From positions 186,001 through 250,000 of IMG/VR virus record IMGVR_UViG_3300031857_000002: a stretch of 64,000 bases of DNA. One strand, given 5' to 3'. The notes beneath the pieces are model-generated. The model was given only the letters and a program-made list of their open reading frames with translations, made no database searches and was not told the DNA's origin. The position numbers and the translations under genes were made by a program. Numbering within the stretch: position 1 is the stretch's first letter; every line of letters starts with the position of its first letter. This document shows positions 1-55,621 of the stretch, piece by piece.

Positions 1-3000
1 TTGGTAGTTGCCATCAAAGTTGTTTTCTCTTGCCCACAAAGAGGCCAATTCATTGGCTTTTGCTCTAGTGTTCTCTGCAGGGCGGAAACGATATAATTCA
101 CGATTTAATCCGTCAACTATTTTCCACTGTCCAGTTGGGCTTGTGGCAGCACGGCCTTGAGCCATTGGAATGTCTATGTCAACAAGTTCAAGGCCATCGG
201 CAGTGCGCACACTATAAAAATCATCAGGATGATTGCGACGATACTGTTCAAGTCTGGCCAAAGCAGCTTCGTCATTGGGTGCTAGGAAGGCTACCGCTGT
301 ATGTTGGCTACTTGGATCAAATATTTGATATTCTCTACCAGAGCTGGTGGCACGGCCTGCTGGTTCTTGCCTGCGCACAGGCCTAATGCTAAACATACGT
401 GCGGCTTGAGTGGGTTGTAATCCGTGCGGCCCATGTTGGAAATAATCTTCAAGATGAGCAATTGCTTCTGCTTCATTGGTAACTCTGTCAGGTGCATTTT
501 CTACTGAGTTACCAGTTTGTCTGTTGTAAATTTCATATTTGGTAGTTTGTTCAGTAGGTACGTCGCCAACACGTTCTGCTGACCAACCATTGGTGCTGAA
601 AAATTCTTCCTCAGTGCGCCCACCTACGTTTAGATTCCATTTTTGTCTGGCTTTTTGCATTGCTTCGAATTCATCGGTAGCAACAACTTCTACACCCAGT
701 CTTTGATAGGGAGAACTATTACTACCATAAACTTTCCAAATGGAGGGTTTAGATTTTTCATAATAAGGACTCAATGGTTTGGCACGTAGACTGCCACGGA
801 ACTGTATAGCCTGCGGTGTGTTGGGTTCATCTGGCGCCCAATAGCTTTCGTTAAATGCTTTGTCAATGGCTTCTTCTTTGGTTGTGGCCACAACTTCCAC
901 ACGACCATTACCCCAGGACACATTCCACCAGTAGCGTTGTCCACCAGTGTCGCCCTTCTTAAGTTTGTTAGCTAGATTCTTCTGCTGGAGTTCTTGAGCA
1001 GCTACTTTTCTAAAATCTTTAATGGCCTGTTGTGTTTCTTTGCTGAGTTTGCCGCCAGCCTCTTTCCCATCGCCCTGCAACGACGTCATGTACTTGGCAA
1101 ACTCTTCGATCATATCACCGTACTCGTCTTTGATGCCATCAGGGTTCAACAACTTATACAGTTTCTTCAAGTATTCTTCACGATACATTTCAGGATTTAT
1201 GGCCGCACTCATGGCCACTGTAAAGCGCAACAAGGTGTTTTCAATCTTGTCAAAGTTTTCATCCAGCCAATCGCCACCAGGTGAACGGAATTCAATGTGT
1301 CCGTCTTTGACGTTGATACTAGTGTACTTTGTGGTCACACCTGAGTGGATGGCCTTGCTGGCTGCTGTATCCAAGTGTGTTTTCATTTTTTCTAATGCTT
1401 GTTCTACTGCTTCAGGACGACTGCGAATGTTATCACGAATCATGCCCATGGCACTTTTGGCGTAGAAAGCACCAAGTCGACCAAAGCTGTCAGACACATA
1501 CTCGTCACCCATTAAGATAGCCAACTTAACAAAGTCCAAGTTTTCTCTGCTGTAGTCAGGCACTGAAACATTGATGTGCAATCCTGTTGAATCATTGGTG
1601 TAACACCCATATGATTTGGCCCATCGCTTGACCTTGTTTAGATCATTAAGAATCACATCAATGGGCAGGGGCGGGCTCACAAACTCCAGGCCTCTGTCTC
1701 CGTAGTCGTCGCCTTCTAAACTGCCATCAGGTTCAACCACATAGTGATGCGAACTTGTACTGGGTCTATCCACACTTCCTGCGTGATAATTGGTGCTGGC
1801 TTGAACATCTGTTCCTATAGCATCTTGGAAATCGTTAGCCACATCTTCTATGCTTCTATCACCACCACCCTGTGAATACCAGTGAGGCCAATTAATATCA
1901 TAATTGCTTTCAACGTCCTGCATGGTATTGATATTATTATCTTCCAGCCATTCTGATTCTAAATCTGCATTTTGATTAAAATCTTCTTGAGCGGATTCAC
2001 GTGCCGCATCATACCAGTAGTTGCCGTAGCTTGCTTCTATGACTTTTTCTGTAGCATCGCGATATGTTTGTTGATCAACGGTGTCTGGATAATTGTCTGC
2101 GTCAAGTTCAATGCCCAATATTTCTGCAATTTCTTCTGTGCTGGCGTTTTCTTTAAGGTAGTTGTAGACAAATTCTGATTCGTCGCTGTCCCAACTGCTG
2201 TCAAACTGTTCGCTTAGCCATTCGTAGTAATCATTTTGCATCCGTTCACGCAGTCTAGTGACATCGCCACGGCTGTTGTAATCGCCATCGTAGAAGAAGT
2301 CATAAGCCTCCTGTATGCTACTAACACCTTCATCGTAACTGTAATCTGCTTCCATTTGACCGTCGTCGTCGTCGCCGCCTTCAACATTGGGCACAATCAT
2401 TTCAAATTCCATACCAGCAATGGCGCCTGTCTTGGCAGCTTCGGCTCGTAGGTTCTTGCCGGTCATTTTGATTTCAAACAGTGCAACGCCTTCGTCAAAC
2501 TGCGCAAATTCTTCGTGCAGTTGGTTGGCAAATTCTTTCATCAACAGAGCAGGACGACCTTGTGCATCTGTTTGCAGACCCATCTTGTTGGCTTCTTTGC
2601 CTGTTTGCCCGGGATGCACATCCACTGTGAGTGCTGTGCTAAAACGTTTGTCCTTGGCCTGTGCCCGAGTGGGAATGTATCCTGAGCTTTCCTCTAGCGA
2701 TACATCTTTAAACATTTCGGGATGTTCATCAGACCAATGGCGCATGATTCTACCAGCCATGGCATTAGCTTCGTCTTCCCACCAACTGCCAGTTTCGCCT
2801 GCATTATCTGGCAATCGATCTTTTTCATTCTGTTTGCAATGGGTAAGCTCATGCGCCATTGTTCTTAGGATGTCTAACACATGACGTCCACTTGTGGCAA
2901 GATGCAACACGTTGTTATCTGGATTAAATTGGCCAAAACTACCTGTGGACTCGCTCCAGTCTGTGTTGTGATGCAACACCATTTCGGGAGCATTTTCAAT

Positions 3001-3951
3001 TTCTAAAAAGTCTATGCAATTATCAAAAAATCTTGCTAGAACACTATCAATATCAGCTTCATTCAAGAACATCTGTGTTGTTGGACTCACACCGTAAGGA
3101 GATATTGTAGCATCTTCTCTCATGCTCTCGCCGCCACCCCCGTCACCTCCACCTTCGCCGGCTTCTCCACCAAACGAGAATCCTGGTGTGTAGTATCCAC
3201 CAAACCCGTATCTCACACGAGATTTTTTCTTTTTCTTGCGTTCTTGCAAACTCAACTGTTGATCTTTGGCAGCAGTGCGAGCAGTGTATAACTTTTCAAT
3301 CAGACCCTGTGTGCGTAACATTTTGTAGGCTAGATTTTCAGGACCTAGTTCACCGTTCTTGTCCAAACCTGCTTGACGCATCTGTTTGATACGTGCGGCT
3401 GTTCGAGTAAGGCGATTGATATCATTGCTGTCAATGGCAGAGTCAATACGATGCTTCATCAGTTCGTACTTGCTTTTTACAGCACCGTCATTCACTGTGC
3501 TTTCTCTCTTGCGAGGAATAGCAGTCCAGTCGTTGTTTACTACTGAATAGATGCCTTGTGAGTGATGTGTTTGATTGGCGGGCTGAACATACAACTCCAC
3601 AGGATAGCCGCCAATTGATAAGTTGTGCTCATCATTATATTGGTACTTTTTGGCATTGAACAACTCACGATAAACTTCGTCGGTTTCATTTCGTGGAACG
3701 TCTACCACAAGGTGTAGGTCAATGTCCGAGTGTGGAGTATATGTATAACCAGCGTTGCTTCCGCTGAGTGTGATGTCTTTGACTTCCAGGTCAGACAGTC
3801 CTAGACTTTGTTTGAAATCTTTGGCAATGGCCAACAGTTTTCTGCGCACTTCTGGGCGCATGCGAGAACCTTGCCAAATGCGTGGGTTAAGTTCGTCATT
3901 AAACTTAACAGCATCGGCAAGGTTATAGGAATCTAGTTCGTTGATGTTCAT
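1..3951 (-). CDS. Giant multidomain protein (>=1317 aa, 3'-partial): Pol-beta-type nucleotidyltransferase + HExxH metallopeptidase-like + Amidoligase_2-like + C-terminal repeats
   Basis: I translated it by hand: ATG at 3951 and no in-frame stop down to base 1. It is missing from the track because it runs off the edge. Motifs: GSNAGY (3745-3762), SDIDLH (3712-3729), HELTH (2839-2853), EFE (2401-2409), GLEFVSPPL, GLHINVSV (1561-1584), IEFRSPGG (1273-1296). Confidence 0.85.
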   Translation of the reverse strand, partial: MNINELDSYNLADAVKFNDELNPRIWQGSRMRPEVRRKLLAIAKDFKQSLGLSDLEVKDITLSGSNAGYTYTPHSDIDLHLVVDVPRNETDEVYRELFNAKKYQYNDEHNLSIGGYPVELYVQPANQTHHSQGIYSVVNNDWTAIPRKRESTVNDGAVKSKYELMKHRIDSAIDSNDINRLTRTAARIKQMRQAGLDKNGELGPENLAYKMLRTQGLIEKLYTARTAAKDQQLSLQERKKKKKSRVRYGFGGYYTPGFSFGGEAGEGGGDGGGGESMREDATISPYGVSPTTQMFLNEADIDSVLARFFDNCIDFLEIENAPEMVLHHNTDWSESTGSFGQFNPDNNVLHLATSGRHVLDILRTMAHELTHCKQNEKDRLPDNAGETGSWWEDEANAMAGRIMRHWSDEHPEMFKDVSLEESSGYIPTRAQAKDKRFSTALTVDVHPGQTGKEANKMGLQTDAQGRPALLMKEFANQLHEEFAQFDEGVALFEIKMTGKNLRAEAAKTGAIAGMEFEMIVPNVEGGDDDDGQMEADYSYDEGVSSIQEAYDFFYDGDYNSRGDVTRLRERMQNDYYEWLSEQFDSSWDSDESEFVYNYLKENASTEEIAEILGIELDADNYPDTVDQQTYRDATEKVIEASYGNYWYDAARESAQEDFNQNADLESEWLEDNNINTMQDVESNYDINWPHWYSQGGGDRSIEDVANDFQDAIGTDVQASTNYHAGSVDRPSTSSHHYVVEPDGSLEGDDYGDRGLEFVSPPLPIDVILNDLNKVKRWAKSYGCYTNDSTGLHINVSVPDYSRENLDFVKLAILMGDEYVSDSFGRLGAFYAKSAMGMIRDNIRSRPEAVEQALEKMKTHLDTAASKAIHSGVTTKYTSINVKDGHIEFRSPGGDWLDENFDKIENTLLRFTVAMSAAINPEMYREEYLKKLYKLLNPDGIKDEYGDMIEEFAKYMTSLQGDGKEAGGKLSKETQQAIKDFRKVAAQELQQKNLANKLKKGDTGGQRYWWNVSWGNGRVEVVATTKEEAIDKAFNESYWAPDEPNTPQAIQFRGSLRAKPLSPYYEKSKPSIWKVYGSNSSPYQRLGVEVVATDEFEAMQKARQKWNLNVGGRTEEEFFSTNGWSAERVGDVPTEQTTKYEIYNRQTGNSVENAPDRVTNEAEAIAHLEDYFQHGPHGLQPTQAARMFSIRPVRRQEPAGRATSSGREYQIFDPSSQHTAVAFLAPNDEAALARLEQYRRNHPDDFYSVRTADGLELVDIDIPMAQGRAATSPTGQWKIVDGLNRELYRFRPAENTRAKANELASLWARENNFDGNYQ

Positions 3952-3968: not shown

Positions 3969-4850
3969 TCAGTCTGCGTTAGCTACTTTCTTGCTAGACG
4001 CCAACACAGTGGCTTCTACAGGCGGTGCAGGTTCAGCAGCCAGTTGATGTGGTGTTGCTGGCACAGGGTTTACAGGCACAGGCATGGACTTGGGCAAGCC
4101 GCCTGCCAAGTGCATTTCATGCAGATCTTGATAGAGTTTTTCGTGTGTGCCAAAGTCAAACACATAGGTACCTGTGTGCTTGAGCAACACACGTTTGTCC
4201 ACAAAAATCTGTCCACCTAGATCACGCCAGTTTTCACAGAATGTCCAGTCTTCTGAATAGTAGCGGCCTTCACGCACAGCAGTATCAAAGTAGGTTTTCA
4301 TGTGTACGTTGAGTGCAGGATCAAGTCCAATGTCATTGGTAAATGGCTTCACAGCAGGGTGTGCAGTGAGTTTGTCAAACACATGACGCTTCATGAGCAA
4401 GAAACCTGTGCCTGTTTTGGTAACTTCTACTAGACCACTTGGATCGTTTTCTTCTGCACCAGGAATGCCGTTCACACACCACTTGACCGGCAGGCTTTTC
4501 ATTGGATACAAACCACCAATAACGTCTTTGTCAGCATTGAGCAAGGCCAACAGGTGCCATGGCTCCCAGCCAATGTCTGCGTCAATAAACATCAGGTGTG
4601 TGCTACCTTCTGTGCAAAGGAACTTGGCAGTAAGGGTATTACGTGCTCGGCTGATCAGTGATTCATTGGTCATTGTTTCCACAGTCCAATCAATGCCCAA
4701 TTGGCGGCATGTATTGGCCCATTTAATAAAGCTCATGAATGTGGACTCAGTGAGTTGTCCGCCATAACAGGGCATGCAGATATGCACTCGTGTAGTCTTT
4801 AGATAATCAAGATTAACTTGAATTTGCTGTTCAGCCATTGGGTTCTCCAT
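3969..4850 (-). CDS. Glycosyltransferase (GT-A fold, GT2-like)
   Basis: ESLISRARN, FIDADIGW (DxD), GTGFLLMKRHVF and SEDWTFC motifs. Confidence 0.7.
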   Translation of the reverse strand: MENPMAEQQIQVNLDYLKTTRVHICMPCYGGQLTESTFMSFIKWANTCRQLGIDWTVETMTNESLISRARNTLTAKFLCTEGSTHLMFIDADIGWEPWHLLALLNADKDVIGGLYPMKSLPVKWCVNGIPGAEENDPSGLVEVTKTGTGFLLMKRHVFDKLTAHPAVKPFTNDIGLDPALNVHMKTYFDTAVREGRYYSEDWTFCENWRDLGGQIFVDKRVLLKHTGTYVFDFGTHEKLYQDLHEMHLAGGLPKSMPVPVNPVPATPHQLAAEPAPPVEATVLASSKKVANAD

Positions 4851-4894
4851 AAAATTGTGTAATATTTACATTGTAGCACAGCACTGGCAAAATT

Positions 4895-6013
4895 TCAAGC
4901 TCTTGTGATAAAATTGTAGAATTCTGGGTGAGTGTGTTGATAACTCTGATTGGTAATAGCATCGTAGTCTTGAATGTACTGTAAGAATGGACCATAAGGA
5001 TCGTCTACCACTGTGATATAACTACTGATATGCGCCAATTCAGGCACACAGGCAATGCGAGTTAACACAGCATCACGCACATCTGCAGTCATTGCAGTGG
5101 CCGAGCAATGTGCCCGTAATCCTGGGAACCAAGTGAACGCATTGTAATTTTTCTTTAACCAAGGAAATGTTCTATTCAGAAAGGCATCTAATTCAGCAAG
5201 ATAAAAAATGTTCAACATGCTGTAGGTAGTTTGTGCAAAGTAGTCAAAGTCTGGGCATTGTTTGCGGAACCAGTGCATGTTGTCCACAACACGAGCCCAG
5301 TCAGCACCATGGCGTTGATATTCAAATCGTTGGTCCATGTCATCAATGCTGAAGTACATGGTCACATGTTCACACTTGTTTAGAATATCCAAAAACTTTT
5401 TGTTTGGTCGTTGGGTGCCATTGGTCACAACAACAACTTCTAAATCATTGTAGTCTCGATACTTGCCCATGTTGGCAAAGAACTCTAGGTAGTTGGATTC
5501 CATAAACGGCTCGCCGCCCTGCATCTGCACAGTTTTTAGTGAGAGAAACAATTCAGGATCATCAATCACAGGTTGATTTCTAGCTTGGTATCTAGTGGCA
5601 GGATCAAAGTAATTCCATTCTGGCGGTGCAATAGCCTGCCACTTTGAACTACTCCACGGACCGCATATGGCACAGGCAAGGTTGCACAAGTTTCCCAGAT
5701 TCAAATCAATCTTGCCATTGCGAGAGCCACGTGGACGAAGGTTAGCAGTTTGCCTTGAACTTTGCAAGCCCATGCTTTCTGTGTGATAGCAAGTGTTGCA
5801 TCCTGCTACAGGACGTCCTGCCTCAGTCTCATCTCTAAGATGCTGTATCCAAGGCGCAGAGTTATGGCCATGATAGATTTGATCAAACCCTGTATTCAAC
5901 ACAGCAGTTTCTGCGCTTTGATAAAGGCAGCATGGTTTATGTGTTAACTGATCGTTGGTTTGGCTGAGATACATGCGGTCCTTAAGTTCCGCACAACGGG
6001 TATCTTGATTCAT
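4895..6013 (-). CDS. Radical SAM protein with additional N-terminal Cys motif
   Basis: CNLACAIC (CxxxCxxC), GGEPF, N-terminal KPCC...CNTC. Confidence 0.85.
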   Translation of the reverse strand: MNQDTRCAELKDRMYLSQTNDQLTHKPCCLYQSAETAVLNTGFDQIYHGHNSAPWIQHLRDETEAGRPVAGCNTCYHTESMGLQSSRQTANLRPRGSRNGKIDLNLGNLCNLACAICGPWSSSKWQAIAPPEWNYFDPATRYQARNQPVIDDPELFLSLKTVQMQGGEPFMESNYLEFFANMGKYRDYNDLEVVVVTNGTQRPNKKFLDILNKCEHVTMYFSIDDMDQRFEYQRHGADWARVVDNMHWFRKQCPDFDYFAQTTYSMLNIFYLAELDAFLNRTFPWLKKNYNAFTWFPGLRAHCSATAMTADVRDAVLTRIACVPELAHISSYITVVDDPYGPFLQYIQDYDAITNQSYQHTHPEFYNFITRA

Positions 6014-6016: not shown

Positions 6017-7453
6017 TTATTGTTTTTTGGCTTCGTCAATATAGTCGGCATTTTCTTTAAATGCTAACTTGTTGGTTCTCAAACGGTTGATGGCAATTTC
6101 CAGAGCACGATCCAGTTTTAGATTCAGTGCTTGATAGTTGTCAGCGGCCGCGCCACGCACCAGCAAGCGAGTGTCAAAGTCCTGTTGCATTGCTGGCGTT
6201 AACAGTCCTTTGTATTCTAGTTTTTGTGACAGAGCATCCAACTGCTGTTGCTTTTTGATAGCCTGATCCAACTGTGCAATTCTGTTTTTTAGTACAGAAT
6301 GTTTTTCGCCAGGCTGTGCCACAGGCACAGCCGGTGGATTGAATCGTTGCTTGGGTTGTTGTCCTGCTAGTTTTGTACTGTTAGCACGGAAATCCTGTTC
6401 CCATTGGTCAACTTCTTGTTGACGTTGTTGTTCAATGTTTTGCTTGGCTTGCTGTAATGCGTTGAATGCATCAGGCTTGAGTCCTTCATACGTAGCAGCC
6501 CAGCCTTGATTTTCACTAACCTTGTCCGAAGATTCAAATGAGAAATCACTTGGTTTAAACTGTGGATACTTGGCAATAACTTTGGCAATGTACCGGTCCA
6601 GGATTTCATAGGGTATATCTGTAGCAACCAATTTAGGGATCTTGCCTGATCTCACATAGATGCTGACCTTGCCTGGATGCATGATTCTTTGAACAAATGG
6701 CCCTTCTGCTACTGGCTGGTTCTCGCGACGTTGGTAACCAGCAGTCATTCCGCCTACAAAGTTTTGTGCATCCACTTCGTCCAACCCACGTTGTTTTCTT
6801 TGTTTGTGTATGCTCTTGAATTGATTACGTTTGTTCGGGCGTGGAAGGTTATCCAACGCACTCTCATCTACTACACCCATTGCTGTGTCCAACAGTTTGA
6901 CCACAGTGGCAGCTAGTTTAGGATTGGTTTGTGTCTTGGGGTACAAGCTCATTACCAGAGCTGTTTTGCGTTTTTCGTTTAGCCGGGGCCATGCACCGCG
7001 AATCTCTGTTGCTGATGTCATGCCAGGACCAAACTCCACAGTAGGCAAGTAGGTCATGTAAGCACGTTGGCTTAAAGGCTGATCGCTAGCGTCATTGTAT
7101 GGTTGTAGATAACTGGGTGTGCCATCTTTCTTAGTGCCTCCAGGACGAGGCTGTGATCCTGCGTCTTTTTCACTGCGCACAAAGATCAACTGTGTGTTGT
7201 TGGGATCGTACTTGTGTACAATTTCTTCAGCACGAAAAGGTGATTTAACCTGTGTAAATCTACCTTTTGGGACACCTGCTAGTTGTGCAAGTTTTTCTTT
7301 GACCGGGAATGGAAACGGTCGTGTGCTGGTATCATTGGTAGCAGCCACATATACATCAGCACCAGGAAATGCTTCTACGGCAGATTGATAAAGTGCGGCG
7401 TGCCCCGCATGAAAAGGGTGAAATCCCCCGGGCATGATTACTAACTGTTTCAT
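6017..7453 (-). CDS. HxGH (cytidylyltransferase-like) nucleotidyltransferase with long modular C-terminal extension
   Basis: PGGFHPFHAGH at the N-terminus and TSATEIR (KMSKS-like); the extension is punctuated by VDE/LDE/VAE/VSE/IDE. Confidence 0.7.
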   Translation of the reverse strand: MKQLVIMPGGFHPFHAGHAALYQSAVEAFPGADVYVAATNDTSTRPFPFPVKEKLAQLAGVPKGRFTQVKSPFRAEEIVHKYDPNNTQLIFVRSEKDAGSQPRPGGTKKDGTPSYLQPYNDASDQPLSQRAYMTYLPTVEFGPGMTSATEIRGAWPRLNEKRKTALVMSLYPKTQTNPKLAATVVKLLDTAMGVVDESALDNLPRPNKRNQFKSIHKQRKQRGLDEVDAQNFVGGMTAGYQRRENQPVAEGPFVQRIMHPGKVSIYVRSGKIPKLVATDIPYEILDRYIAKVIAKYPQFKPSDFSFESSDKVSENQGWAATYEGLKPDAFNALQQAKQNIEQQRQQEVDQWEQDFRANSTKLAGQQPKQRFNPPAVPVAQPGEKHSVLKNRIAQLDQAIKKQQQLDALSQKLEYKGLLTPAMQQDFDTRLLVRGAAADNYQALNLKLDRALEIAINRLRTNKLAFKENADYIDEAKKQ

Positions 7454-8454: not shown

Positions 8455-9117
8455 TTAGTTACGAGCCTGTATAGGCAGGGTCTTTCGAACCAGTTGTGGG
8501 CATGCTAGATTTATAAACAGCGCATCTTTTTCGTTGTCATGATCCACAAAGTAATTTGAAGGGATCCACATTCGTTGGCCGTTTAGTAACATTTTAAATC
8601 CTGGGCTGGGACGAAATTGATCTGCTCGTGTGAAAAAGTATTTCTTTATGAGTTCTCTTTGCGACTCATCTAGATAGCGTTCACGAAAATAGGTTCTAAA
8701 CTTGTGTTGGGGATTGTTTAGCACAACACAATCTGCGGGCAAACACACATCAGCTTGCTTGTGCTCAACTAACTTTGTGCCCGGATGTGCTACAACCGCC
8801 GCAAAATCTTCTGGAGTGTTGGTGTAGAACCACATGGTGTTGTTGCACACCACTTTCTTAAAGGGATTCTTGATGGCCAGCAAGAGATCACATACTTCGT
8901 GCAATCGTTCTTGATCACGATCTGATATAACTGTTCTAGTGCCACTGCTACGCCAATTCTGCAGATAGGTGTTACGCCAATAGATAGTGTTGTCAATACT
9001 TTTGTGGCTTAACTGGCGCATCATATTGCCTTCGGGAATCCACCATATCAAGCAGTGATAATACTGCTTGTAATATGGTTCGCTACGTTGCTCAATGTTT
9101 ACGTCAATATCAAACAT
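8455..9117 (-). CDS. Hypothetical protein
   Basis: Long ORF; start reassigned to MFDIDVN at 9117, which overlaps the clpA stop. Confidence 0.6.
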   Translation of the reverse strand: MFDIDVNIEQRSEPYYKQYYHCLIWWIPEGNMMRQLSHKSIDNTIYWRNTYLQNWRSSGTRTVISDRDQERLHEVCDLLLAIKNPFKKVVCNNTMWFYTNTPEDFAAVVAHPGTKLVEHKQADVCLPADCVVLNNPQHKFRTYFRERYLDESQRELIKKYFFTRADQFRPSPGFKMLLNGQRMWIPSNYFVDHDNEKDALFINLACPQLVRKTLPIQARN

Positions 9118-11371
9118 CTGGGAATCGGATAATACCGTCATCGTCCACCACAGGAATGATCTGTGCCACAGATTCAAAATGTACTGCGTCGTCTTGCATT
9201 GTGACAAACACATCACAGTCACTCAGTCGATCAAACAAGATCTTTTTAGATAGTGGTACCTTGATCAGCTCGTCAATCTTACGTGCCAAGGGTCTAGCAC
9301 CCATCTTGGGATCGTAGCCCTTGTCGGCCAACATGTCTATGACCTCTTCGCTGAGTACAAGTTTGATGTGTTTTTCATCCAAACTGGCCTTGAGCTGATC
9401 TGCAAACTTGATCACAATCTTCTTGATGGCCAATCGGTCCAGCTTGTTGAATCTGCAGATTTGATCAATACGATTACGCAGTTCTGGCTTGAAGAACTCT
9501 TTCATAGCTTTGTCTTCGTTACCAGTTTTTTCCTGACTTCCAAAACCAATAGCATTGCTTTCGTTGTCTCTAGCACCCAAGTTTGAAGTCAGGATAATAA
9601 TGGTGTTCTTAACATCCACACGCTTGCCTGCTGAACTAGTGATGTGCCCTTCGTCCAGCATCTGTAGCAAGATGTTGCTGACATCAGGGTGTGCTTTTTC
9701 AATTTCATCAAACAAGATGATTGAAAAAGGGTTCTTGGTAAGATCACTGATCAGCTTGCCGCCGCCAACGTTGCCATCTTCAAAGCCCACATAGCCTGGG
9801 GGTGCACCAATCAAACTTGATACTGTGTGTTTTTCCTGGTACTCACTCATGTCGTACTTCAACAGTTTCATGTCTAGGTTATCACTCAGCAGTTTGGCCA
9901 GTTCTGTTTTGCCTGTGCCTGTTGGACCCAAGAACAAGAAACTCGCCATAGGGCGAGTTGTTGCACCAATGCCTGCAAAGTTGATGTACACACGTTCCAG
10001 CACAGCATCCACTGCTTGATCCTGTCCGTAGAGCTTTTGCTTGATGTTGCTTTCAAGATCTATAATATTTGCTGAGCGTTCGTTCTGCAGTCGGTCCATT
10101 GGAATGCCTGCTACCTTGCTGACCTGTGCCATGATCATGTCTCGAGTGACAGTTACCAGGCCAGCATCCTTCACACGCTGTCGGGCACAAGCACCATCCA
10201 ACAAGTCAATACTCTTGTCAGGATTCTTCTTGTCATGAATATAACGTCCACTCAGTTCCACAGCCGCGGCCATTGCTTCTGTGTCGATCATCACATTGTG
10301 AAACTTCTCCAGTCGCGGACTCAGGCCAATAAGGATCTGTTCTGTGGTTGACGCATTGGGCTCGTCAATGCTCAAGCGATGGAATCTGCGCATCAACGCA
10401 CGATCTTTTTCAAATGACTCGTAGTATTCTTCCCATGTTGTGCTTGCAATAACTTTGAGGTTGCCCTTGGTGATTGCAGGTTTGAGCATGTTGGCAAAGT
10501 CCAGATTGCTTGACCCCGATGATCCTGCACCCTTCATGGTGTGTGCTTCGTCCACAAACAAGATACAGTTCTTCTTGGCTTCTAGTGCGGCAATAACTTG
10601 CTTGAACTTTTCTTCAAACTCACCGCGATACTTAGATCCTGCCAGTAATGAACCAATCTCCAGTCCCCACACTTCGTGACCTTTCAAGAACTCGGGCACG
10701 TTGTTAGCATGTATTTCTTGTGCAAGTCCGTCAATGATGGCAGTTTTGCCCACGCCTGGATCACCTACCATGAGCACATTGGCCTTGAATCGACGTGCCA
10801 ACACAGTGATCATGTCTTCTAGTTCTGCATTACGACCAATCAAGGGCTCCAGTTGATTCTTTGCGGCCATTGCTGAGATGTTGGTGCAATGCTCTTCCAA
10901 GATGTCTGTGGCCTGTTGTACATTCATTTTCACACTCTCGGGCTGGTGATTGCTTTGATAGAACTCAATAAACTCGGCCTTGCGGATACCATACTTGAGC
11001 AAGAAGTAGTGTGCATGACTGTTGTTTTCGGCCATGATGCTCAAGTACACATCAATCAGGCTCATGCTTCTGCGACCTGTAAACATGACCTGTACATTGG
11101 CACGATTAAATATGCGTTCCAGAGCTTGTGTTTTACGAGGTTGTAAATTTTCTGAAGCACTGATCAAATTGATCTGGCTGTCCAAGTAAGCATTGAGCTC
11201 TGTGTCCAGCAGATCTGCATCTGCACCAAATTTGTCTACCACACGTCTGAACGGCAAGTGGCGTAGCATGCCCAACAACAAGTGTTCTGTGACCACATAT
11301 TCGTGACACTTTTCTCTGGCCAATTTAACGGCTGCTTCGACCACTTGTTCAATTTCGGGATTGTTCTGCAT
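9110..11371 (-). CDS. clpA: ATP-dependent Clp protease ATP-binding subunit, ClpA-type
   Basis: Clp N-domain; Walker A GDPGVGKT and GPTGTGKT; pore loops KYRGEFE and GYVG; IGF loop; no ClpB M-domain. Start MQNNPE follows an AGGA RBS. Confidence 0.93.
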   Translation of the reverse strand: MQNNPEIEQVVEAAVKLAREKCHEYVVTEHLLLGMLRHLPFRRVVDKFGADADLLDTELNAYLDSQINLISASENLQPRKTQALERIFNRANVQVMFTGRRSMSLIDVYLSIMAENNSHAHYFLLKYGIRKAEFIEFYQSNHQPESVKMNVQQATDILEEHCTNISAMAAKNQLEPLIGRNAELEDMITVLARRFKANVLMVGDPGVGKTAIIDGLAQEIHANNVPEFLKGHEVWGLEIGSLLAGSKYRGEFEEKFKQVIAALEAKKNCILFVDEAHTMKGAGSSGSSNLDFANMLKPAITKGNLKVIASTTWEEYYESFEKDRALMRRFHRLSIDEPNASTTEQILIGLSPRLEKFHNVMIDTEAMAAAVELSGRYIHDKKNPDKSIDLLDGACARQRVKDAGLVTVTRDMIMAQVSKVAGIPMDRLQNERSANIIDLESNIKQKLYGQDQAVDAVLERVYINFAGIGATTRPMASFLFLGPTGTGKTELAKLLSDNLDMKLLKYDMSEYQEKHTVSSLIGAPPGYVGFEDGNVGGGKLISDLTKNPFSIILFDEIEKAHPDVSNILLQMLDEGHITSSAGKRVDVKNTIIILTSNLGARDNESNAIGFGSQEKTGNEDKAMKEFFKPELRNRIDQICRFNKLDRLAIKKIVIKFADQLKASLDEKHIKLVLSEEVIDMLADKGYDPKMGARPLARKIDELIKVPLSKKILFDRLSDCDVFVTMQDDAVHFESVAQIIPVVDDDGIIRFPDV

Positions 11372-11401
11372 GGGGTTCCTTTGTAAAACTATTATTGTGT
11401 T

Positions 11402-11430
11402 ATTATACTTGATGTTTTGATCACAAGCAA
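11402..11430 (-). promoter_or_regulatory. sigma70-type promoter upstream of clpA
   Basis: TTGCTT-N17-TATAAT on minus strand. Confidence 0.55.
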
Positions 11431-11444
11431 CCAATACGAAATAT

Positions 11445-12227
11445 TTATTCGCGGTATTTTTCGATTGCTTCTACCAATTCAGGTGCTAGTGTGGCAGGAA
11501 TTCGAGCATTTAATTTCACAAACATGTCACCTTGTGCGCCTCTACGATCTCTGAGTCCTTGACTGCGTAGTCTCAGCACAGCATTGGCTTGACAACGCGG
11601 TGGAACCTTGACTGTGAGACTGTGCCCCAAAATGTTGTTCACTGTGATGTCTGTACCCAAAATCAAATCCCACACTGAGATGCTGTGGTCCACAGTTAGG
11701 TTAAGCCCATCACGATGCCAAGCAGGATCTGGACGTATTCTAAATGTGATCACAAGATCCTGACCTCCTGGTGCAAGTCCGCCGTATTGGATATTGTCCC
11801 CGTCATTGAGCCCTAGAGGCACATCCAGTTCTACTGTGCTTTGTCCCTGTGATGTGGCCACTGCTACTGCTTTCTTTCCACCTTGGGCCACGTCTAGTAG
11901 GGAGATGTACAAGGTCATGCGCACATGATTCCTGCGTGGGTGCTGTTGCCCAAACCCGCCGCCGCCAAACATTTGGCTAAAAATATCATTGAACTGTGGT
12001 CCACCACCAAATCCTCCAAAGCCCCCAAACTGGGGTTGTGGGTTGTCGTACTCGGCACGTTTTTGTTCGTCACCTAGCACAGCATAGGCAGCTTGGATGG
12101 CCTGGAACTTGGCAGTATCACCACCCTTGTCCGGATGATGCTGACTGGCCAGTTTTCTAAAGGCCTGTTTGATTTCAGCGGCTGTGGCAGTTCGTGGGAC
12201 GCCTAGTGCGGCGTAGTGATCGGTCAT
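11445..12227 (-). CDS. dnaJ: DnaJ-class co-chaperone (CbpA-like, no Zn finger)
   Basis: J-domain with HPD (HHPDKGG), G/F-rich linker and DnaJ C-terminal domain. Confidence 0.92.
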
Positions 12228-12229
12228 AA

Positions 12230-12263
12230 AAAAATCCTGTACACATAATTATACAGGATTTTT
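12230..12263 (-). terminator. Hairpin/intrinsic terminator overlapping the dnaJ promoter and RBS
   Basis: Perfect 12-bp inverted repeat AAAAATCCTGTA (12230-12241) / TACAGGATTTTT (12252-12263); the U-tract runs into the dnaJ ATG. Confidence 0.7.
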
Positions 12264-12276
12264 GGGGTGGTGTCAA
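12248..12276 (-). promoter_or_regulatory. Consensus sigma70 promoter for dnaJ
   Basis: TTGACA-N17-TATAAT. Confidence 0.8.
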
Positions 12277-51807: not shown

Positions 51808-51836
51808 ATTATAACATGCCCAAATTTATTTGTCAA
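51808..51836 (-). promoter_or_regulatory. Consensus sigma70 promoter
   Basis: TTGACA-N17-TATAAT. Confidence 0.8.
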
Positions 51837-51981
51837 CTACTGGCCGTTCTGGACGATTGATACAGTATTCACAAGTGGGATCATCACACTTGGATTCGGT
51901 CCACTCGTTGGTTGTTTGGTTGTAGTAGGCATCATGCTCTTCAGAGTACTTGAGGTCAACAGGGTCTTGATACGTAATCAT
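51826..51981 (-). CDS. Small Cys-containing hypothetical protein
   Basis: MITYQDP...CDDPTCEYC; ATGA overlap with upstream gene. Confidence 0.5.
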   Translation of the reverse strand: MITYQDPVDLKYSEEHDAYYNQTTNEWTESKCDDPTCEYCINRPERPVVDK

Positions 51982-52208
51982 TTTCGTAATAACTCCATGG
52001 TATATTCGGTGTCTCTCATGTAGGCCACAGGTTTTAGCCACCCTGCGGTGATCGCAGTGACCAAAATACTCTTGTATTCAGCAGGACAGTTGTTGCTAAT
52101 TTCAAATGCCGCACGTGACACCAGTTGAATGCCATCGGGAGAAAACGTGAAATCTGGATCTCCGGGACGCAGAGTTTTAACAGATCGACTTGTAGTAATC
52201 TTAAACAT
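51978..52208 (-). CDS. Small hypothetical protein
   Basis: MFKITTS start 6 nt after TATAAT. Confidence 0.55.
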   Translation of the reverse strand: MFKITTSRSVKTLRPGDPDFTFSPDGIQLVSRAAFEISNNCPAEYKSILVTAITAGWLKPVAYMRDTEYTMELLRK

Positions 52209-52214
52209 GCTAGT

Positions 52215-52243
52215 ATTATAGCATAACAAGATTTAGTGGTCAA
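52215..52243 (-). promoter_or_regulatory. sigma70 promoter
   Basis: TTGACC-N17-TATAAT. Confidence 0.75.
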
Positions 52244-52246
52244 CTG

Positions 52247-52543
52247 TTACTTGAACAAGATCAAGGCCATTAGCACAGCCTGCACAATAAAGCCCATGCC
52301 AATGGTCACAATGTTTAGGATGTCTTTGAGCACCACAGCACGGAAGAACATGAGCACCAGGCCTGCCCAGGCAAACAGCACAATGTCCAAATTTGGTGTG
52401 CGATCACTCAGTCCGGTCATCAAGGCCAGCAAGGTGGGAACAGTTGCGGCATGAATCACAATGGCTGCCAACCAACCCAGGGTTTCTGCAGAGATTTTGG
52501 TAAGGGTAGTTGAAAGAAAGTTGCGTACTGCTTCGATGTTCAT
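52247..52543 (-). CDS. Small 3-TM membrane protein
   Basis: Three hydrophobic segments; ATGA-coupled to the SleB gene. Confidence 0.6.
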   Translation of the reverse strand: MNIEAVRNFLSTTLTKISAETLGWLAAIVIHAATVPTLLALMTGLSDRTPNLDIVLFAWAGLVLMFFRAVVLKDILNIVTIGMGFIVQAVLMALILFK

Positions 52544-53118
52544 TTGCGTTCTCCGTAAAAAATGTGACGTCCAATTTTTTCAATTTTGGGATGATTCCAT
52601 CCTGGGTTTACATAGTCTGCATGATAGTAAAGTGCTTTCTGCAAACTGGGCAATCTAAAGCCTTCCAGCAGGACCTTCTTGGCCACTTCTTCTGATTCAC
52701 GCCACATGGGTTTGTGTACTGGTTTGACTTTGTGATTGTTTTCGCAGTACCATGAGAATTGGCATACTACTTTTTCGTAGAACACATTTTTCTGATGCAC
52801 CACACCGCAAACTGAATTGGCAAACTTGCCCGATTGCATGCGATTCATTGTGACCTGGGCCACTGCTACTTTGCCTTCAAACGGCTCACTTGCGGCTTCC
52901 CAGTAGATGTTGCGTGTTAGACATTCCAGCTGACGTGTTTGTTCTGCGGCAGTGACATATCCCTCAGGCATGCCCAAGCGAACATTGCGTAGACTATCAA
53001 GGCGAGCATCACAAACTGCTACCACTGCTATTGCCACTGCCACAAATCCCACAGTCTTGAGAACACGCGAGATCCAAGGTACGAAGTCAATATTTTTTAA
53101 AGTTAGGTTTGTTTCCAT
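52540..53118 (-). CDS. SleB-like cell wall hydrolase (Hydrolase_2)
   Basis: CLTRNIYWEA.SEP..GKVAVAQVTMNR, CQFSWYC, ALYYHADYV.P.W, IGRHIFY; N-terminal TM. Confidence 0.9.
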   Translation of the reverse strand: METNLTLKNIDFVPWISRVLKTVGFVAVAIAVVAVCDARLDSLRNVRLGMPEGYVTAAEQTRQLECLTRNIYWEAASEPFEGKVAVAQVTMNRMQSGKFANSVCGVVHQKNVFYEKVVCQFSWYCENNHKVKPVHKPMWRESEEVAKKVLLEGFRLPSLQKALYYHADYVNPGWNHPKIEKIGRHIFYGERK

Positions 53119-53213
53119 AGGCTTTTACTTACTCAGATGGGTTGATATTCCGGAAAGACCGGGCCAAAATGAAGCATTATTACCATTAAGTAGGTAGTTA
53201 TCCTACTCAATGT

Positions 53214-53242
53214 ATTATACAACAGATGCAGTTATTTGTCAA
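53214..53242 (-). promoter_or_regulatory. Consensus sigma70 promoter
   Basis: TTGACA-N17-TATAAT. Confidence 0.7.
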
Positions 53243-54047
53243 CTCTGCACACAGGAATTGGTTCCATTTTGTGCAAGTTACGGGTACGAATAGCACGATA
53301 AGTTTTGAGTTGTGCTCGTTCTTCTTTGCTCATTTGGATTGGCAATGTATTGTACACACACTCTCGATCCAGTCGATCATTGGTCATGGCACGTTCCAAA
53401 TCTGGATAGCTCATGCCCAGTTGATCTTCATCTGTGCGGTCATCTGTCCATAAGCCATCGGTTGGTGCAGCGTCAATGATCTCTTGCGGCAAGCCAAATT
53501 CTCTGCCCATATCCCAGACCTCGGTTTTCAAGCAGTCGCCAACGGGGCTGATGTCCACGCCACCATCCCCGTATTTGGTAAAGAAACCCACACCAAAGTC
53601 TTCTACCTTGTTTCCTGTACCTACCACAATACCACCATGACTTTGTGCAATTTGGTACAAGGTCATCATGCGTAAACGAGCACGTGAGTTGGCAAATGCC
53701 AGTTGCTCTTGGGCATCGGGTTCTTGCTCTGTGGAGCAGAATGGTCCAACTTTCTTTTCAAACGCTGTGAAAACTGGAGTCAAATCCATGCTCATATGGG
53801 TAACATTATCCTTATATCGTTCCAACAACCACCCTGCCTGCATACTACTGCGATTGTCCAGTTTTTTGTTCTGGCGGATTGGCATTTGAACCACAATGGT
53901 TTTCAGTCCAGTTTCGGCACACAAGGCACTCACAACCGAGCTGTCAATCCCGCCTGATATGCCCACCACAAGAGTTGAGATCTTGTGTTTGGTGGCATAT
54001 GATCGAATCCATTTGGTGATGTGTTTGATTCTTTGTTTAGATGTCAT
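53232..54047 (-). CDS. nadE: NH3-dependent NAD+ synthetase
   Basis: GISGGIDSSVV, NSRARLRM, GTGNKVE, GFFTKYGDGG, APTDGLW, TDEDQLGMSY; no glutaminase domain. Confidence 0.92.
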   Translation of the reverse strand: MTSKQRIKHITKWIRSYATKHKISTLVVGISGGIDSSVVSALCAETGLKTIVVQMPIRQNKKLDNRSSMQAGWLLERYKDNVTHMSMDLTPVFTAFEKKVGPFCSTEQEPDAQEQLAFANSRARLRMMTLYQIAQSHGGIVVGTGNKVEDFGVGFFTKYGDGGVDISPVGDCLKTEVWDMGREFGLPQEIIDAAPTDGLWTDDRTDEDQLGMSYPDLERAMTNDRLDRECVYNTLPIQMSKEERAQLKTYRAIRTRNLHKMEPIPVCRVDK

Positions 54048-54568
54048 AAGTTTATGTTTGGTTTGGGCATGGACTTGAGTTTGTTCCACATTTCTGCTTT
54101 TTCTTTGCACTTGGCTTCTAGCTTGCGATAGCGATTGCCTAATCGGCGCAAGTCGTCCCATTCTTTTTCAAGTTCAGGATTTGGTACCAGCATGTTGAGT
54201 CGTTCTTCTAGTGCTTCAAGAGTTTTCATCAAGCTCTTGCCATTGATGTCAATGTCAGCGTTGGTACCTTGTAAACTGAGTTTACCAGATTGATTTAGAT
54301 CCATAGCACTTGTGCCATTGAAACCTGATGTGCCTGTGGTCCACATGGTGTTGGCGTATGTCCCACTAGAACCACCAGCACCGCCACCACCAATTGTTAT
54401 TGTTGGTGCACTTATTGTCGGTGCACTTGATATAGTAAACACTGGACTGGCCATTGTGATACTACTACTAAGATCTATTGTACTGAGATCTACTGTTTGA
54501 AAATCGTAGTCTTGTGAGGAAATTGTGTCTTCTAGGTTTGAGAAGGAGATATCTTTCGAATCAGCCAT
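54044..54568 (-). CDS. Hypothetical protein (S/T/G-rich, C-terminal coiled coil)
   Basis: 174-aa ORF with ATGA overlap onto nadE. Confidence 0.6.
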   Translation of the reverse strand: MADSKDISFSNLEDTISSQDYDFQTVDLSTIDLSSSITMASPVFTISSAPTISAPTITIGGGGAGGSSGTYANTMWTTGTSGFNGTSAMDLNQSGKLSLQGTNADIDINGKSLMKTLEALEERLNMLVPNPELEKEWDDLRRLGNRYRKLEAKCKEKAEMWNKLKSMPKPNINL

Positions 54569-54705
54569 GAGCCGTCCTTGTTGTCTTGCCAGTCAAGTGT
54601 GTCGCCTTCTTGCCAGCCAAGCTCGGCGCACAACTCGATACCCAGATCCAGCATTAACTCGCCGGTGTCTGGGTCTTCAACTACGTTCACAATCTTTGTG
54701 GTCAT
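54532..54705 (-). CDS. Small AbrB/MazE-like protein (57 aa, not in track)
   Basis: Manual translation: MTTKIVNVVEDPDTGELMLDLGIELCAELGWQEGDTLDWQDNKDGSWLIRK... Confidence 0.55.
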   Translation of the reverse strand: MTTKIVNVVEDPDTGELMLDLGIELCAELGWQEGDTLDWQDNKDGSWLIRKISPSQT

Positions 54706-54832
54706 TGGTTTTTAAATGCTGGTACCAGGCAGCAAGTCTTGCAACCTTTTCTTTAAGCAGTTGCTCTCTCTGTTCTGGTGTAAGCACAATGGGCCAGTCA
54801 GTTTGATGTAGTTGACTATCTTTTACAATCAT
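54677..54832 (-). CDS. Small hypothetical protein (51 aa, not in track)
   Basis: Manual translation MIVKDSQL...; ATGA overlap with upstream gene. Confidence 0.4.
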   Translation of the reverse strand: MIVKDSQLHQTDWPIVLTPEQREQLLKEKVARLAAWYQHLKTNDHKDCERS

Positions 54833-55020: not shown

Positions 55021-55048
55021 GTTGTTTCCTTTGTTAATAACAATAGTA

Positions 55049-55077
55049 ATTATACACGCCTGTAGAGGCGATGTCAA
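55049..55077 (-). promoter_or_regulatory. Consensus sigma70 promoter
   Basis: TTGACA-N17-TATAAT. Confidence 0.8.
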
Positions 55078-55602: not shown

Positions 55603-55621
55603 ATTATTAGTTATCTCGGTC

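What the first reader, a model, noticed from the sequence alone, without database searches (positions are those of the whole stretch)
1..3951. Hidden >1317-aa protein combining a nucleotidyltransferase, a metallopeptidase-like motif and an amidoligase
Seen: one open frame from 3951 to the edge, absent from the ORF track. It carries a Pol-beta NTase signature (GS...DxD...VELYV), HELTH, the Amidoligase_2 motif set (EFE, DGSL, GLEFVSP, GLHINVS, IEFR), an acidic insert, and five or so small repeats (e.g. VEVVAT..EA) near the edge. Domain junctions fall at SLQE, FLNE, SLEE, LHEE and LFE. Knowledge: the T4 prohead protease gp21 cuts after (L/I)xE, and COOH-NH2 ligases can peptide-tag targets. Inference: a packaged polyprotein cut into separate host-modifying enzymes (nucleotidylation, proteolysis, glutamylation-type tagging) that are injected with the DNA.
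Basis: partly seen in the sequence, partly recalled or inferred. Interest (0 to 1): 0.78.

Follow-up and report, generated by a model that had tools for sequence, protein, structure and literature searches.

The report
Jumbo-phage multi-enzyme polyvalent protein
A freshwater jumbo phage encodes one 1864-residue protein that strings together a nucleotidyltransferase, a small zinc peptidase, an amide ligase and swappable effector cassettes. Every module border carries the motif cut by T4-type head proteases, so it may be a true phage polyprotein, but neither cutting nor packaging has been shown.

Summary
Window 3951→1 (minus strand) is an open frame that runs off the window edge. In the 320-kb genome it is a 1864-aa gene.

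The NTase, the minimal zincin (HExxH…E) and the GS-fold Amidoligase_2 are each supported by Pfam scores, invariant motifs or predicted fold. They are followed by seven small β-β-α repeats and C-terminal cassettes (DUF6886-like, ParB-like).

The fixed order NTase–zincin–conserved disordered peptide–amidoligase–repeats defines a large family (3452 cluster representatives). In the viral contigs sampled it occurs on fragments and on jumbo-phage-sized records. Relatives swap in ART, GNAT, NUDIX, deaminase, M23 and GH19 cassettes. This makes it a new variant of the "polyvalent proteins" of Iyer et al. 2017.

[LI]xE motifs are not enriched overall. However, the ones at module borders are nearly invariant, lie in disordered linkers, flank inserted cassettes and coincide with the ends of free-standing homologs. 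The phage has an S77 prohead protease, and its own head proteins show the T4 L/I-x-E pattern.

Processing into modules is therefore plausible. Packaging and injection remain unproven. The non-structural context, the σ70-type promoter and the lack of a late-promoter box argue mildly against them.

The parts
1..3951 (-). Window part (aa 1-1317) of a 1864-aa gene. The remaining 547 aa lie left of the window, at genome C1:184357-186000. They hold repeats 6-7, a DUF6886-like cassette, a 66-aa module and a ParB-like (DGHHR) cassette, separated by five phi-A-E-G linkers.
3241..3951 (-). Pol-beta-type nucleotidyltransferase module (aa 1-237), ending in LSLQE.
   Evidence: Pfam NTP_transf_2 above cut-off and phrog_36119 5e-42. 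Invariant GS, DxD and E119. Free-standing homologs of about 235-265 aa occur in Molly, cyanophages and Lak phages.
3058..3240 (-). Lys-rich then Gly-rich low-complexity linker (aa 238-298, pI 9.1), ending in FLNE.
2689..3057 (-). Minimal zincin-like metallopeptidase domain (aa 299-421; HELTH at 366-370; third ligand probably E392 or E394 in EDEANA), ending in SLEE.
   Evidence: A1 alignment. AF2 pLDDT 84-96. Foldseek hits to minigluzincins, IrrE, Wss1, SprT and LtrC. Only sub-threshold Pfam zincin hits. A free-standing 132-aa homolog occurs in cyanophage S-SRM01.
2473..2688 (-). Strongly conserved but predicted-disordered 72-aa segment (aa 422-493, from SSGYIPT to ALFE), bounded by phi-x-E on both sides.
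   Evidence: Docking on the amidoligase gave no answer.
1057..2472 (-). Amidoligase_2 (GS-fold carboxylate-amine ligase) domain, aa 494-965, with an inserted acidic helical subdomain (about aa 524-700).
16..936 (-). Five of the seven small (~38-aa) beta-beta-alpha repeats (aa 1006-1312). Copy number varies among relatives.
3241..3249 (-). Junction motif L-Q-E (aa 235-237). The family logo is S-[LI]-x-E followed by R/K.
3058..3066 (-). Junction motif L-N-E (aa 296-298), in a disordered stretch before the zincin domain.
2689..2697 (-). Junction motif L-E-E (aa 419-421). This is a cassette-insertion hot-spot in 18 relatives.
2473..2481 (-). Junction motif L-F-E (aa 491-493; E in 67 of 67 representatives). 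This is a cassette-insertion hot-spot in 26 relatives.
3969..4850 (-). Conserved upstream neighbour (293 aa, phrog_1574, function unknown), 17 nt from the start codon and syntenic in relatives.
4870..4898 (-). sigma70-like promoter match (TTGAAA-17-TACAAT with TG, 10/12), just upstream of the 293-aa gene.
12248..12276 (-). Perfect sigma70 consensus promoter (TTGACA-17-TATAAT) heading the minus-strand gene string that ends with this gene.

Best explanation
This is a 'polyvalent' multi-enzyme protein of an uncultured freshwater jumbo myovirus. The phage has a T4-type head whose major capsid protein (MCP) is closest to PA5oct/Rak2-like phages.

Shown:
- A fixed N-terminal core holds a Pol-beta-type NTase, a minimal zincin peptidase, a conserved disordered 72-aa peptide and a GS-fold amidoligase with 5-7 small repeats.
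- A variable array of effector cassettes follows. Here these are DUF6886-like and ParB-like. In relatives they are ART, GNAT, NUDIX, deaminase, M23 and GH19.
- Every border between the N-terminal modules, and between the C-terminal cassettes, carries a conserved hydrophobic-x-Glu motif in an unstructured linker.

Inferred:
- These motifs are cleavage sites for the phage's own T4-type (S77) prohead protease, which cuts after Glu in L/I-x-E.
- The precursor is therefore taken into the prohead and cut into separate pieces: NTase, zincin, peptide, a 104-kDa amidoligase-plus-repeats piece and the small cassettes.
- The pieces are delivered with the DNA to modify host targets, as T4 Alt is.

The biochemical targets of the NTase and the amidoligase are unknown.
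For: Modules:
- Pfam and PHROG hits and invariant catalytic motifs.
- Zincin fold and GS fold.

Family:
- More than 1100 full-length hits and 3452 cluster representatives, all with the same module order.
- Cassette census: ART, GNAT, NUDIX, deaminase, M23, GH19, ParB. This is the repertoire of polyvalent proteins (PMC5512222). Cell-wall hydrolase cassettes make sense only for a protein delivered from the virion.

Borders:
- Inserts in relatives fall at residues 419 (18 relatives) and 490 (26 relatives). They carry phi-x-E at their ends: 14/18 on the left and 14/18 on the right at site 419, and 26/26 on the right at site 490. The background rate is 0.11.
- Border logos: the NTase end has E in 104/106 and a hydrophobic residue in 106/106; the amidoligase start has E in 67/67. 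Divergent relatives keep them.
- Five phi-A-E-G linkers in the C-terminus against 0.09 expected.
- Linker DNA is not conserved, so selection acts on the peptide.
- The motifs lie in segments with pLDDT below 50.
- Free-standing NTase and zincin homologs end at these positions.
- P1 and P3 are constant while P1' varies, which fits non-primed-side recognition by a serine protease better than a zincin.

Protease:
- S77 scores 81.5 bits, within a T4-type head module.
- The scaffold-like protein, protease and portal are among the most [LI]xE-enriched proteins of the genome.
- All 4 [LI]xE motifs of the MCP lie in its first 43 of 398 residues.
- T4 rule and Alt/internal-protein precedent: PMC9026906.
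- S77 is present in 5 of 6 near-complete genomes that carry the family.
Against: - There are no virion proteomics and no cultured relative carries the protein.
- The gene context is non-structural and syntenic: DnaJ, ClpB-like, radical SAM, cytidylyltransferase-like.
- The gene string is headed by a 12/12 sigma70 promoter in the genome arm that holds nearly all such promoters. No exact TATAAATA late box lies between 175 and 287 kb. In T4 logic this means early expression (PMC2988021).
- Relatives also lack a late box directly upstream.
- No N-terminal capsid-targeting propeptide is evident.
- Overall [LI]xE is not enriched.
- There are no phi-x-E motifs between the repeats.
- Known S77 substrates lose N-terminal propeptides; none is known to be split into several enzymes (PMC10052503).
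- The LFE motif could simply be part of the amidoligase fold.
- The protein's own zincin could be the processing enzyme, as Iyer et al. propose.
Confidence: 0.42

Rival explanations
1. An early-made cytoplasmic polyvalent enzyme (the T4 ModA/ModB route rather than the Alt route). The protein is translated soon after infection from sigma70-type promoters. It is either cut into modules by its own zincin domain, as Iyer et al. propose for MPTase-bearing polyvalent proteins, or works uncut. It acts in host takeover or counter-defence and is never packaged.
For: A perfect sigma70 promoter heads the gene string, and the genome partitions into sigma70 and TATAAATA arms. The context is non-structural and syntenic. 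The free-standing zincin homolog in S-SRM01 sits among replication genes. A zincin is always present in the core. The MPTase autoprocessing model comes from PMC5512222. T4 precedent of early ART enzymes.
Against: The P1-Glu/P3-hydrophobic signature with variable P1' matches S77, not what is known of zincins. GH19, M23 and PG-binding cassettes in relatives have no obvious use in the infected cell's cytoplasm. Promoter calls are consensus matches only, and the strong one lies 8.3 kb upstream. Relatives show no consistent promoter picture.
Confidence: 0.33
2. A single, unprocessed multi-domain enzyme in which the NTase and the amidoligase act in one pathway. For example, they could nucleotidylate and then amidate a nucleic-acid, cell-envelope or protein substrate. 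The repeats would serve as a substrate-binding array, and the phi-x-E motifs would be only structural features of linkers and domain ends.
For: The order of the three enzymes is fixed across 3452 cluster representatives, which suggests functional coupling. L-x-E|[IV]-x-M is invariant and could belong to the ligase fold. Overall [LI]xE is not enriched.
Against: All three enzymes exist as separate genes in other phages, and not together. The same motif recurs at both ends of unrelated inserted cassettes and five times as phi-A-E-G in the variable tail. That is hard to explain by folding constraints.
Confidence: 0.15
3. The repeated linker motifs are seams left by, or used for, cassette shuffling by recombination, and have no proteolytic role.
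For: Cassettes are swapped exactly at the linkers between near-identical strains. For example, P0004 carries a 188-aa cassette flanked by MSESIAEG on both sides.
Against: The DNA at the five linkers shares only about 8 nt and differs at synonymous sites. Selection is therefore on the peptide, and there is no usable homology for recombination.
Confidence: 0.07

Closest known systems
Polyvalent proteins of phages and conjugative elements (Iyer, Burroughs, Anand, de Souza, Aravind 2017; PMC5512222)
   Same: Many unrelated catalytic domains in one giant polypeptide. A zincin-like MPTase is present as a constant module. Pol-beta NTase, ParB-like, ART, GNAT, NUDIX-type and lysozyme-type cassettes occur, and relatives vary widely in architecture. 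That paper also predicts processing into units and delivery with the DNA.
   Different: That paper never mentions an amidoligase (0 occurrences). It lists the Pol-beta NTase among the domains it contrasts with the phage-only set (text truncated). Here a rigid four-part core precedes the variable part. The borders carry a phi-x-E motif that points to the head protease rather than the MPTase. No Pfam LPD or PolyVal model hits. The gene is not in a late or structural context.
T4 Alt and internal proteins IPI-III (packaged, gp21-processed, injected)
   Same: The phage has a T4-type head with an S77 protease. L/I-x-E sites are present. The payloads are host-modifying enzymes; one relative even carries an ADP-ribosyltransferase cassette.
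   Different: The T4 proteins are single enzymes that lose short terminal propeptides. They carry an N-terminal capsid-targeting sequence. Here there would be ten or more internal cuts releasing several enzymes, and no N-terminal targeting signal is evident.
phiKZ / 201phi2-1 / SPN3US ejection and inner-body proteins
   Same: Jumbo phages in which a diverged S77 protease cuts many head-internal proteins after Glu, at several redundant sites.
   Different: Their motif is S/A-x-E. Cleavage removes propeptides (PMC10052503). There is no sequence relationship to this protein.
P1 DdrB / N4 virion RNA polymerase (MPTase-bearing packaged proteins)
   Same: Large virion-delivered proteins that contain a zincin-like MPTase. 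DdrB is processed before packaging.
   Different: Their other domains are different. These are experimentally shown to be virion components, and this protein is not.
PafA/Dop-Pup and other GS-fold carboxylate-amine ligases (Amidoligase_2, PF12224)
   Same: A GS-type ligase fold. The adjacent conserved disordered peptide would end in Glu if it were cut at LFE.
   Different: There is no sequence similarity to Pup or PafA. The docking prediction gave no answer. This is purely a formal analogy.

Membership tests
Polyvalent proteins (Iyer et al. 2017) | 2-15 functionally disparate domains in one polypeptide of a phage or plasmid | tested here: met
   NTase, zincin, amidoligase, DUF6886-like and ParB-like domains in a 1864-aa phage protein
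Polyvalent proteins (Iyer et al. 2017) | Zincin-like MPTase module | tested here: met
   HExxH plus a downstream Glu are conserved. Helix-beta3-helix-helix fold, pLDDT 84-96. Zincin-only fold hits, including LtrC-like proteins.
Polyvalent proteins (Iyer et al. 2017) | Combinatorial variation of effector domains among relatives | tested here: met
   ART, GNAT, NUDIX, deaminase, M23, GH19, ParB, DUF6886 and DUF6934 cassettes. Insert hot-spots.
Polyvalent proteins (Iyer et al. 2017) | Phage-type members sit among late or virion genes | tested here: not met
   The neighbours are DnaJ, ClpB-like, radical SAM and cytidylyltransferase-like genes. There is no late box, and a sigma70-type promoter lies upstream.
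Polyvalent proteins (Iyer et al. 2017) | Delivered into the host together with the DNA | not testable with these tools
   Needs virion proteomics or injection assays.
Pol-beta superfamily nucleotidyltransferase (Pfam NTP_transf_2) | Score above the Pfam gathering cut-off; G-S motif, DxD and a third carboxylate | tested here: met
   22.9 bits against 21. G64, S65, D76, D78 and E119 are invariant.
Amidoligase_2 (PF12224), GS-fold carboxylate-amine ligase | Score above the Pfam gathering cut-off and a conserved motif set | tested here: met
   29.2 bits against 22, covering profile positions 15-140 of 245 because of the insert. The motifs are invariant in 28 relatives.
Amidoligase_2 (PF12224), GS-fold carboxylate-amine ligase | Glutamine-synthetase-like catalytic fold | tested here: met
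Amidoligase_2 (PF12224), GS-fold carboxylate-amine ligase | ATP-dependent amide-bond formation | not testable with these tools
   Biochemical assay needed.
Curated zincin peptidase families (M78/IrrE, SprT, WLM, DUF6782, etc.) | Score above the family cut-off | tested here: not met
   Best hits are DUF6782 at 1.8e-5 and M78 at 3.3e-4, all below their cut-offs. No PDB sequence hit.
Substrates of T4-type (S77) prohead protease (Alt/IP-like packaged proteins) | The phage encodes an S77 protease that uses L/I-x-E | tested here: met
   PF03420 81.5 bits. The head proteins show the T4 motif pattern. The specificity itself is inferred.
Substrates of T4-type (S77) prohead protease (Alt/IP-like packaged proteins) | Accessible, conserved L/I-x-E sites | tested here: met
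Substrates of T4-type (S77) prohead protease (Alt/IP-like packaged proteins) | N-terminal capsid-targeting propeptide | tested here: inconclusive
   INE(3-5) is conserved, but it aligns inside the fold of free-standing NTases that have a longer N-terminus.
Substrates of T4-type (S77) prohead protease (Alt/IP-like packaged proteins) | Found processed in virions | not testable with these tools
   No cultured relative.
ParB-like nuclease (ParBc_2, PF08857) | Score above the cut-off; DGHHR-type motif | tested here: inconclusive
   20.3 bits against 23.6. The DGHHR motif is present. Some relatives carry PF02195. Atlas leads at 0.80.
DUF6886 (PF21820) | Score above the cut-off | tested here: inconclusive
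   26.2 bits against 27. Precomputed hits in relatives.
Pup-like tag plus PafA-like ligase | A disordered tag ending in Glu that docks on the ligase | tested here: inconclusive
   The peptide is disordered and would end in Glu only after a cut. Complex prediction scored 0.00, 'no answer'.

The most novel reading that the evidence does not exclude
This would be a genuine polyprotein in a tailed phage. One precursor would be taken into the prohead and cut by the head-maturation protease at about ten conserved phi-x-E sites. The cuts would release several different enzymes (NTase, zincin, amidoligase, nuclease-like and other cassettes), which are then injected. The excised, highly conserved disordered 72-aa internal peptide would act as the capsid-targeting element. 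A more speculative alternative is that it serves as a Pup-like tag with a C-terminal Glu that the neighbouring amidoligase ligates to host proteins.
Probability: 0.27. Interest if true: 0.82.

Novelty: new variant of a known kind. Interest (0 to 1): 0.6.

Why it matters
Polyvalent proteins are a computational prediction with very little experimental follow-up, and how they are processed is an open question.

This family is large (thousands of sequence clusters) and widespread in lakes. Its N-terminal core is rigid, so it offers an unusually clean, sequence-defined hypothesis: cuts after Glu at named residues by a named protease. That hypothesis can be tested by simple co-expression or by mining viral metaproteomes.

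If it holds, head-maturation proteases of T4-type phages would gain a second role as polyprotein-processing enzymes, a strategy known from RNA viruses. It would also put a GS-fold amidoligase and an NTase among injected phage effectors, a new class of host-modifying activities.

If the early-cytoplasmic reading is right instead, the family is still a new amidoligase-centred branch of polyvalent proteins.

Tried and rejected
- Overall enrichment of [LI]xE in the protein: rejected (16 against 15.3 +/- 3.7).
- N-terminal MNINE as a T4-like capsid-targeting or cleavage signal: rejected as evidence, because it aligns within the NTase fold of free-standing homologs.
- LHEE (478-481) as a junction: poorly conserved (0.12).
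- The phi-A-E-G motif as a general head-protein motif of this phage: rejected. The proteome has 8 copies and 5 of them are in this protein.
- Profile searches of the zincin, amidoligase and NTase segments against PDB sequences: nothing useful.
- NCBIfam: no hit.
- Atlas search of the repeats: only unnamed small viral proteins. The DpnD/PcfM hit at E 0.24 is not significant.
- Docking of the disordered peptide on the amidoligase: no answer.
- Paralogs in the genome: none.
- Transmembrane segments: none.
- Cultured phage with a full-length homolog: none. PA5oct/Rak2-like phages, the closest by MCP, lack the protein.
- Recombination-seam explanation of the linkers: DNA not conserved.
- Co-variation of the junction motif with protease type: could not be tested, because every sampled genome carrying the family is a T4-type-head jumbo phage.
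- Metatranscriptome contigs show that the locus is present in RNA libraries, but they give no timing.
- The 2009 amidoligase paper and the T4 genome review are not held.

Full report
**Observation.**
The minus strand of window 1-3951 is one uninterrupted reading frame of 1317 codons. It is missing from the ORF list only because ORFs that run off a window edge are not listed.

The window belongs to a single 320,175-bp virus record, 44.3% G+C and 92% complete by CheckV. In that record the gene runs from 189951 down to 184357 and encodes 1864 aa. The first ATG follows an in-frame stop, and the upstream gene ends 17 nt before it.

**Modules.**
- Residues 1-237 are a Pol-beta-type nucleotidyltransferase (NTase). 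Pfam NTP_transf_2 scores 22.9 bits against a cut-off of 21, and phrog_36119 gives 5e-42. G64-S65, D76/D78 and E119 are invariant in relatives.
- Residues 299-421 carry HELTH. H, E, H and a downstream Glu in a second helix are at least 95% conserved. Sequence methods give only sub-threshold hits, all to zincin families. An AF2 model is confident (pLDDT 84-96) and has the minimal zincin topology: helix, three strands, HExxH helix, Glu helix.
- Foldseek on that model returns minigluzincins, IrrE, Wss1, SprT-like, DUF4157 and LtrC-like proteins. TM-by-hit reaches 0.75 and rmsd is 3.4 Å.
- The 'acidic insert' is a conserved, confidently folded helical subdomain.
- Seven ~38-aa β-β-α repeats follow, five of them inside the window.
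- Beyond the window edge lie a DUF6886-like cassette (26.2 bits against 27), a 66-aa module and a ParB-like cassette with DGHHR (20.3 bits against 23.6).
- There is no transmembrane segment and no paralog in the genome.

**Family.**
A full-length search found more than 1100 relatives. The best 120 share residues 1-1410 and differ in the C-terminal part. An exhaustive profile search with the zincin-plus-peptide segment found 3452 cluster representatives, 260 of them at E≤1e-30. Among the 150 best, the order NTase–zincin–conserved peptide–amidoligase–repeats is universal, and shorter entries are contig fragments.

Variable cassettes in relatives include ADP-ribosyltransferase, GNAT, NUDIX, cytidine deaminase, M23 peptidase, GH19, PG-binding, ParB, DUF6886 and DUF6934.

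All relatives are metagenomic and unnamed. The larger viral contigs carrying them are 190-364 kb. The phage occurs in many lake and freshwater metagenomes.

By major capsid protein (MCP) the phage is closest to PA5oct, Vibrio 2.275.O and Rak2-like jumbo myoviruses (61-66% identity). None of these has this protein.

Each enzyme also exists as a free-standing gene elsewhere:
- the NTase in Maribacter phages, cyanophages and Lak phages;
- the zincin as a 132-aa protein in cyanophage S-SRM01;
- the amidoligase in RsoM2USA and Atu_ph07.

**The junction motifs.**
The protein has 16 [LI]xE motifs, exactly what shuffling gives (15.3 ± 3.7). The signal lies elsewhere.
1. The best-conserved motifs are the ones at module borders: LQE235-237 (0.93), LNE296-298 (0.73), LEE419-421 (0.77) and LFE491-493 (0.99).
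2. In the more diverse representatives the NTase ends in S-[LI]-x-E, with a hydrophobic residue in 106/106 and Glu in 104/106. The amidoligase begins after [LIV]-x-E, with Glu in 67/67. The conserved peptide begins after φ-x-E(-x). Divergent viral contigs keep this pattern.
3. Relatives insert extra cassettes exactly after residue 419 (18 cases) and residue 490 (26 cases). The inserts bring a φ-x-E at their ends: 14/18 on the left and 14/18 on the right at site 419, and 26/26 on the right side at site 490. The background rate is 0.11.
4. The C-terminal cassettes are separated by five φ-A-E-G linkers against 0.09 expected. The DNA of these linkers differs at synonymous sites, so the peptide is what is conserved.
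5. The motifs lie in segments with pLDDT below 50 that flank folded domains.
6. Free-standing NTase and zincin proteins end at the aligned positions.
7. There are no such motifs between the repeats. The amidoligase and six repeats would therefore stay together as a 104-kDa piece.

**The protease.**
The genome has a T4-type head module: portal, S77 protease (PF03420, 81.5 bits), a scaffold-like protein and a gp23-like MCP. Three observations suggest the protease uses the T4 rule:
- The scaffold-like protein has 15 [LI]xE against 6.6 expected, the second most enriched of all proteins of 150 aa or more.
- The protease and the portal are also enriched.
- All four [LI]xE motifs of the MCP lie in its first 43 of 398 residues.

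This is the pattern expected from the T4 L/I-x-E↓ rule (PMC9026906). P1 Glu and P3 hydrophobic are constant at the borders while P1' varies (R/K, A/S, V/I, G). That fits non-primed-side recognition by such a serine protease better than a zincin; this last point is inference. S77 is present in 5 of 6 near-complete genomes that carry the family.

**What argues against packaging.**
- The gene sits about 140 kb from the head module, in a syntenic block of non-structural genes: DnaJ, a ClpB-like ATPase, radical SAM, a cytidylyltransferase-like gene and a fatty-acid desaturase.
- The genome has 14 exact TATAAATA boxes, nearly all just upstream of ORFs and mostly in the structural arm. None lies between 175 and 287 kb.
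- It has 57 near-consensus σ70 promoters, almost all intergenic on the minus strand between 126 and 311 kb.
- One perfect σ70 promoter (window 12276-12248) heads the gene string that ends with this gene. A 10/12 match lies just before the upstream neighbour.
- In T4, such promoters are early (PMC2988021).
- Relatives show no consistent promoter picture.
- RNA-library contigs cover parts of the gene but say nothing about timing.
- Known S77 substrates lose N-terminal propeptides rather than being split into several enzymes (PMC10052503).

**Interpretation.**
With high confidence, the protein is a new amidoligase-centred branch of the polyvalent proteins of Iyer et al. 2017. That paper does not mention amidoligases.

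That it is cut at the φ-x-E borders is a well-founded inference (about 0.55). That the cutting enzyme is the prohead protease, and that the pieces are packaged and injected, is the best single model (about 0.4). The cell-wall-hydrolase and ART cassettes of relatives support that model. The expression signals weaken it.

The main rival is an early cytoplasmic protein, processed by its own zincin or not at all. T4 shows both routes for one enzyme class: Alt is injected, while ModA and ModB are made early.

The conserved, disordered 72-aa peptide between two border motifs is unexplained. It could be an excisable targeting element or, speculatively, a Pup-like tag. The one docking test gave no answer.

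**Verdict.**
This is a new variant of a known kind, worth a simple cleavage experiment.

Noticed in passing
window 9110-12227 (minus): A phage-encoded DnaJ (260 aa, both Pfam DnaJ domains) sits next to a 774-aa ClpB/ClpA-like double-AAA protein. The pair is syntenic in relatives, upstream of the polyvalent gene.
   Followed up: partly
window 6017-7453 (minus): A 478-aa protein has an N-terminal cytidylyltransferase-like domain (21.2 bits against 21) and a 'PVAEG' motif at residue 248. This is the same linker motif that separates the cassettes of the target protein, so it may be another two-module protein.
   Followed up: no
window 51808-58895 and, more widely, genome 126-311 kb (minus strand): A dense series of near-consensus sigma70 promoters (TTGAC[AC]-17-TATAAT) sits in intergenic gaps before small ORFs: 57 sites at >=11/12 in the genome. 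Exact TATAAATA boxes (14) lie mostly in the structural arm. This is a T4-like early/late partition.
   Followed up: partly
genome C1:172206-174866 (minus), outside the window: An 886-aa ORF lies directly behind an exact TATAAATA box. It has an 'EVAEG' motif at residue 616 and 16 [LI]xE against 10.4 expected. It is a candidate packaged and processed protein.
   Followed up: no
genome C1:40783-41979 (minus), outside the window: The major capsid protein (gp23-like, 398 aa) has all four of its [LI]xE motifs within residues 5-43. This suggests a short N-terminal propeptide with redundant cleavage sites.
   Followed up: partly
genome C1:76833-91160 (plus), outside the window: A giant 4775-aa ORF lies in the structural arm. 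It was not examined.
   Followed up: no
window 4895-6013 (minus); also genome C1:39316-40719 and 53979-55849: Several radical-SAM proteins are encoded by this phage. One lies two genes upstream of the target, and others are near the head module.
   Followed up: no
window 185-499: An RNA-library contig (run X17) replaces 313 nt of the repeat region with 133 other letters. This is consistent with repeat and cassette content differing between co-occurring relatives.
   Followed up: no
L001:3749-4360 (minus) = genome C1:183749-184360: The downstream 203-aa gene overlaps the target's stop codon by 4 nt, which looks like translational coupling. It has a weak GNAT-like hit. In one relative the downstream gene is a 481-aa GNAT-like protein.
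   Followed up: partly
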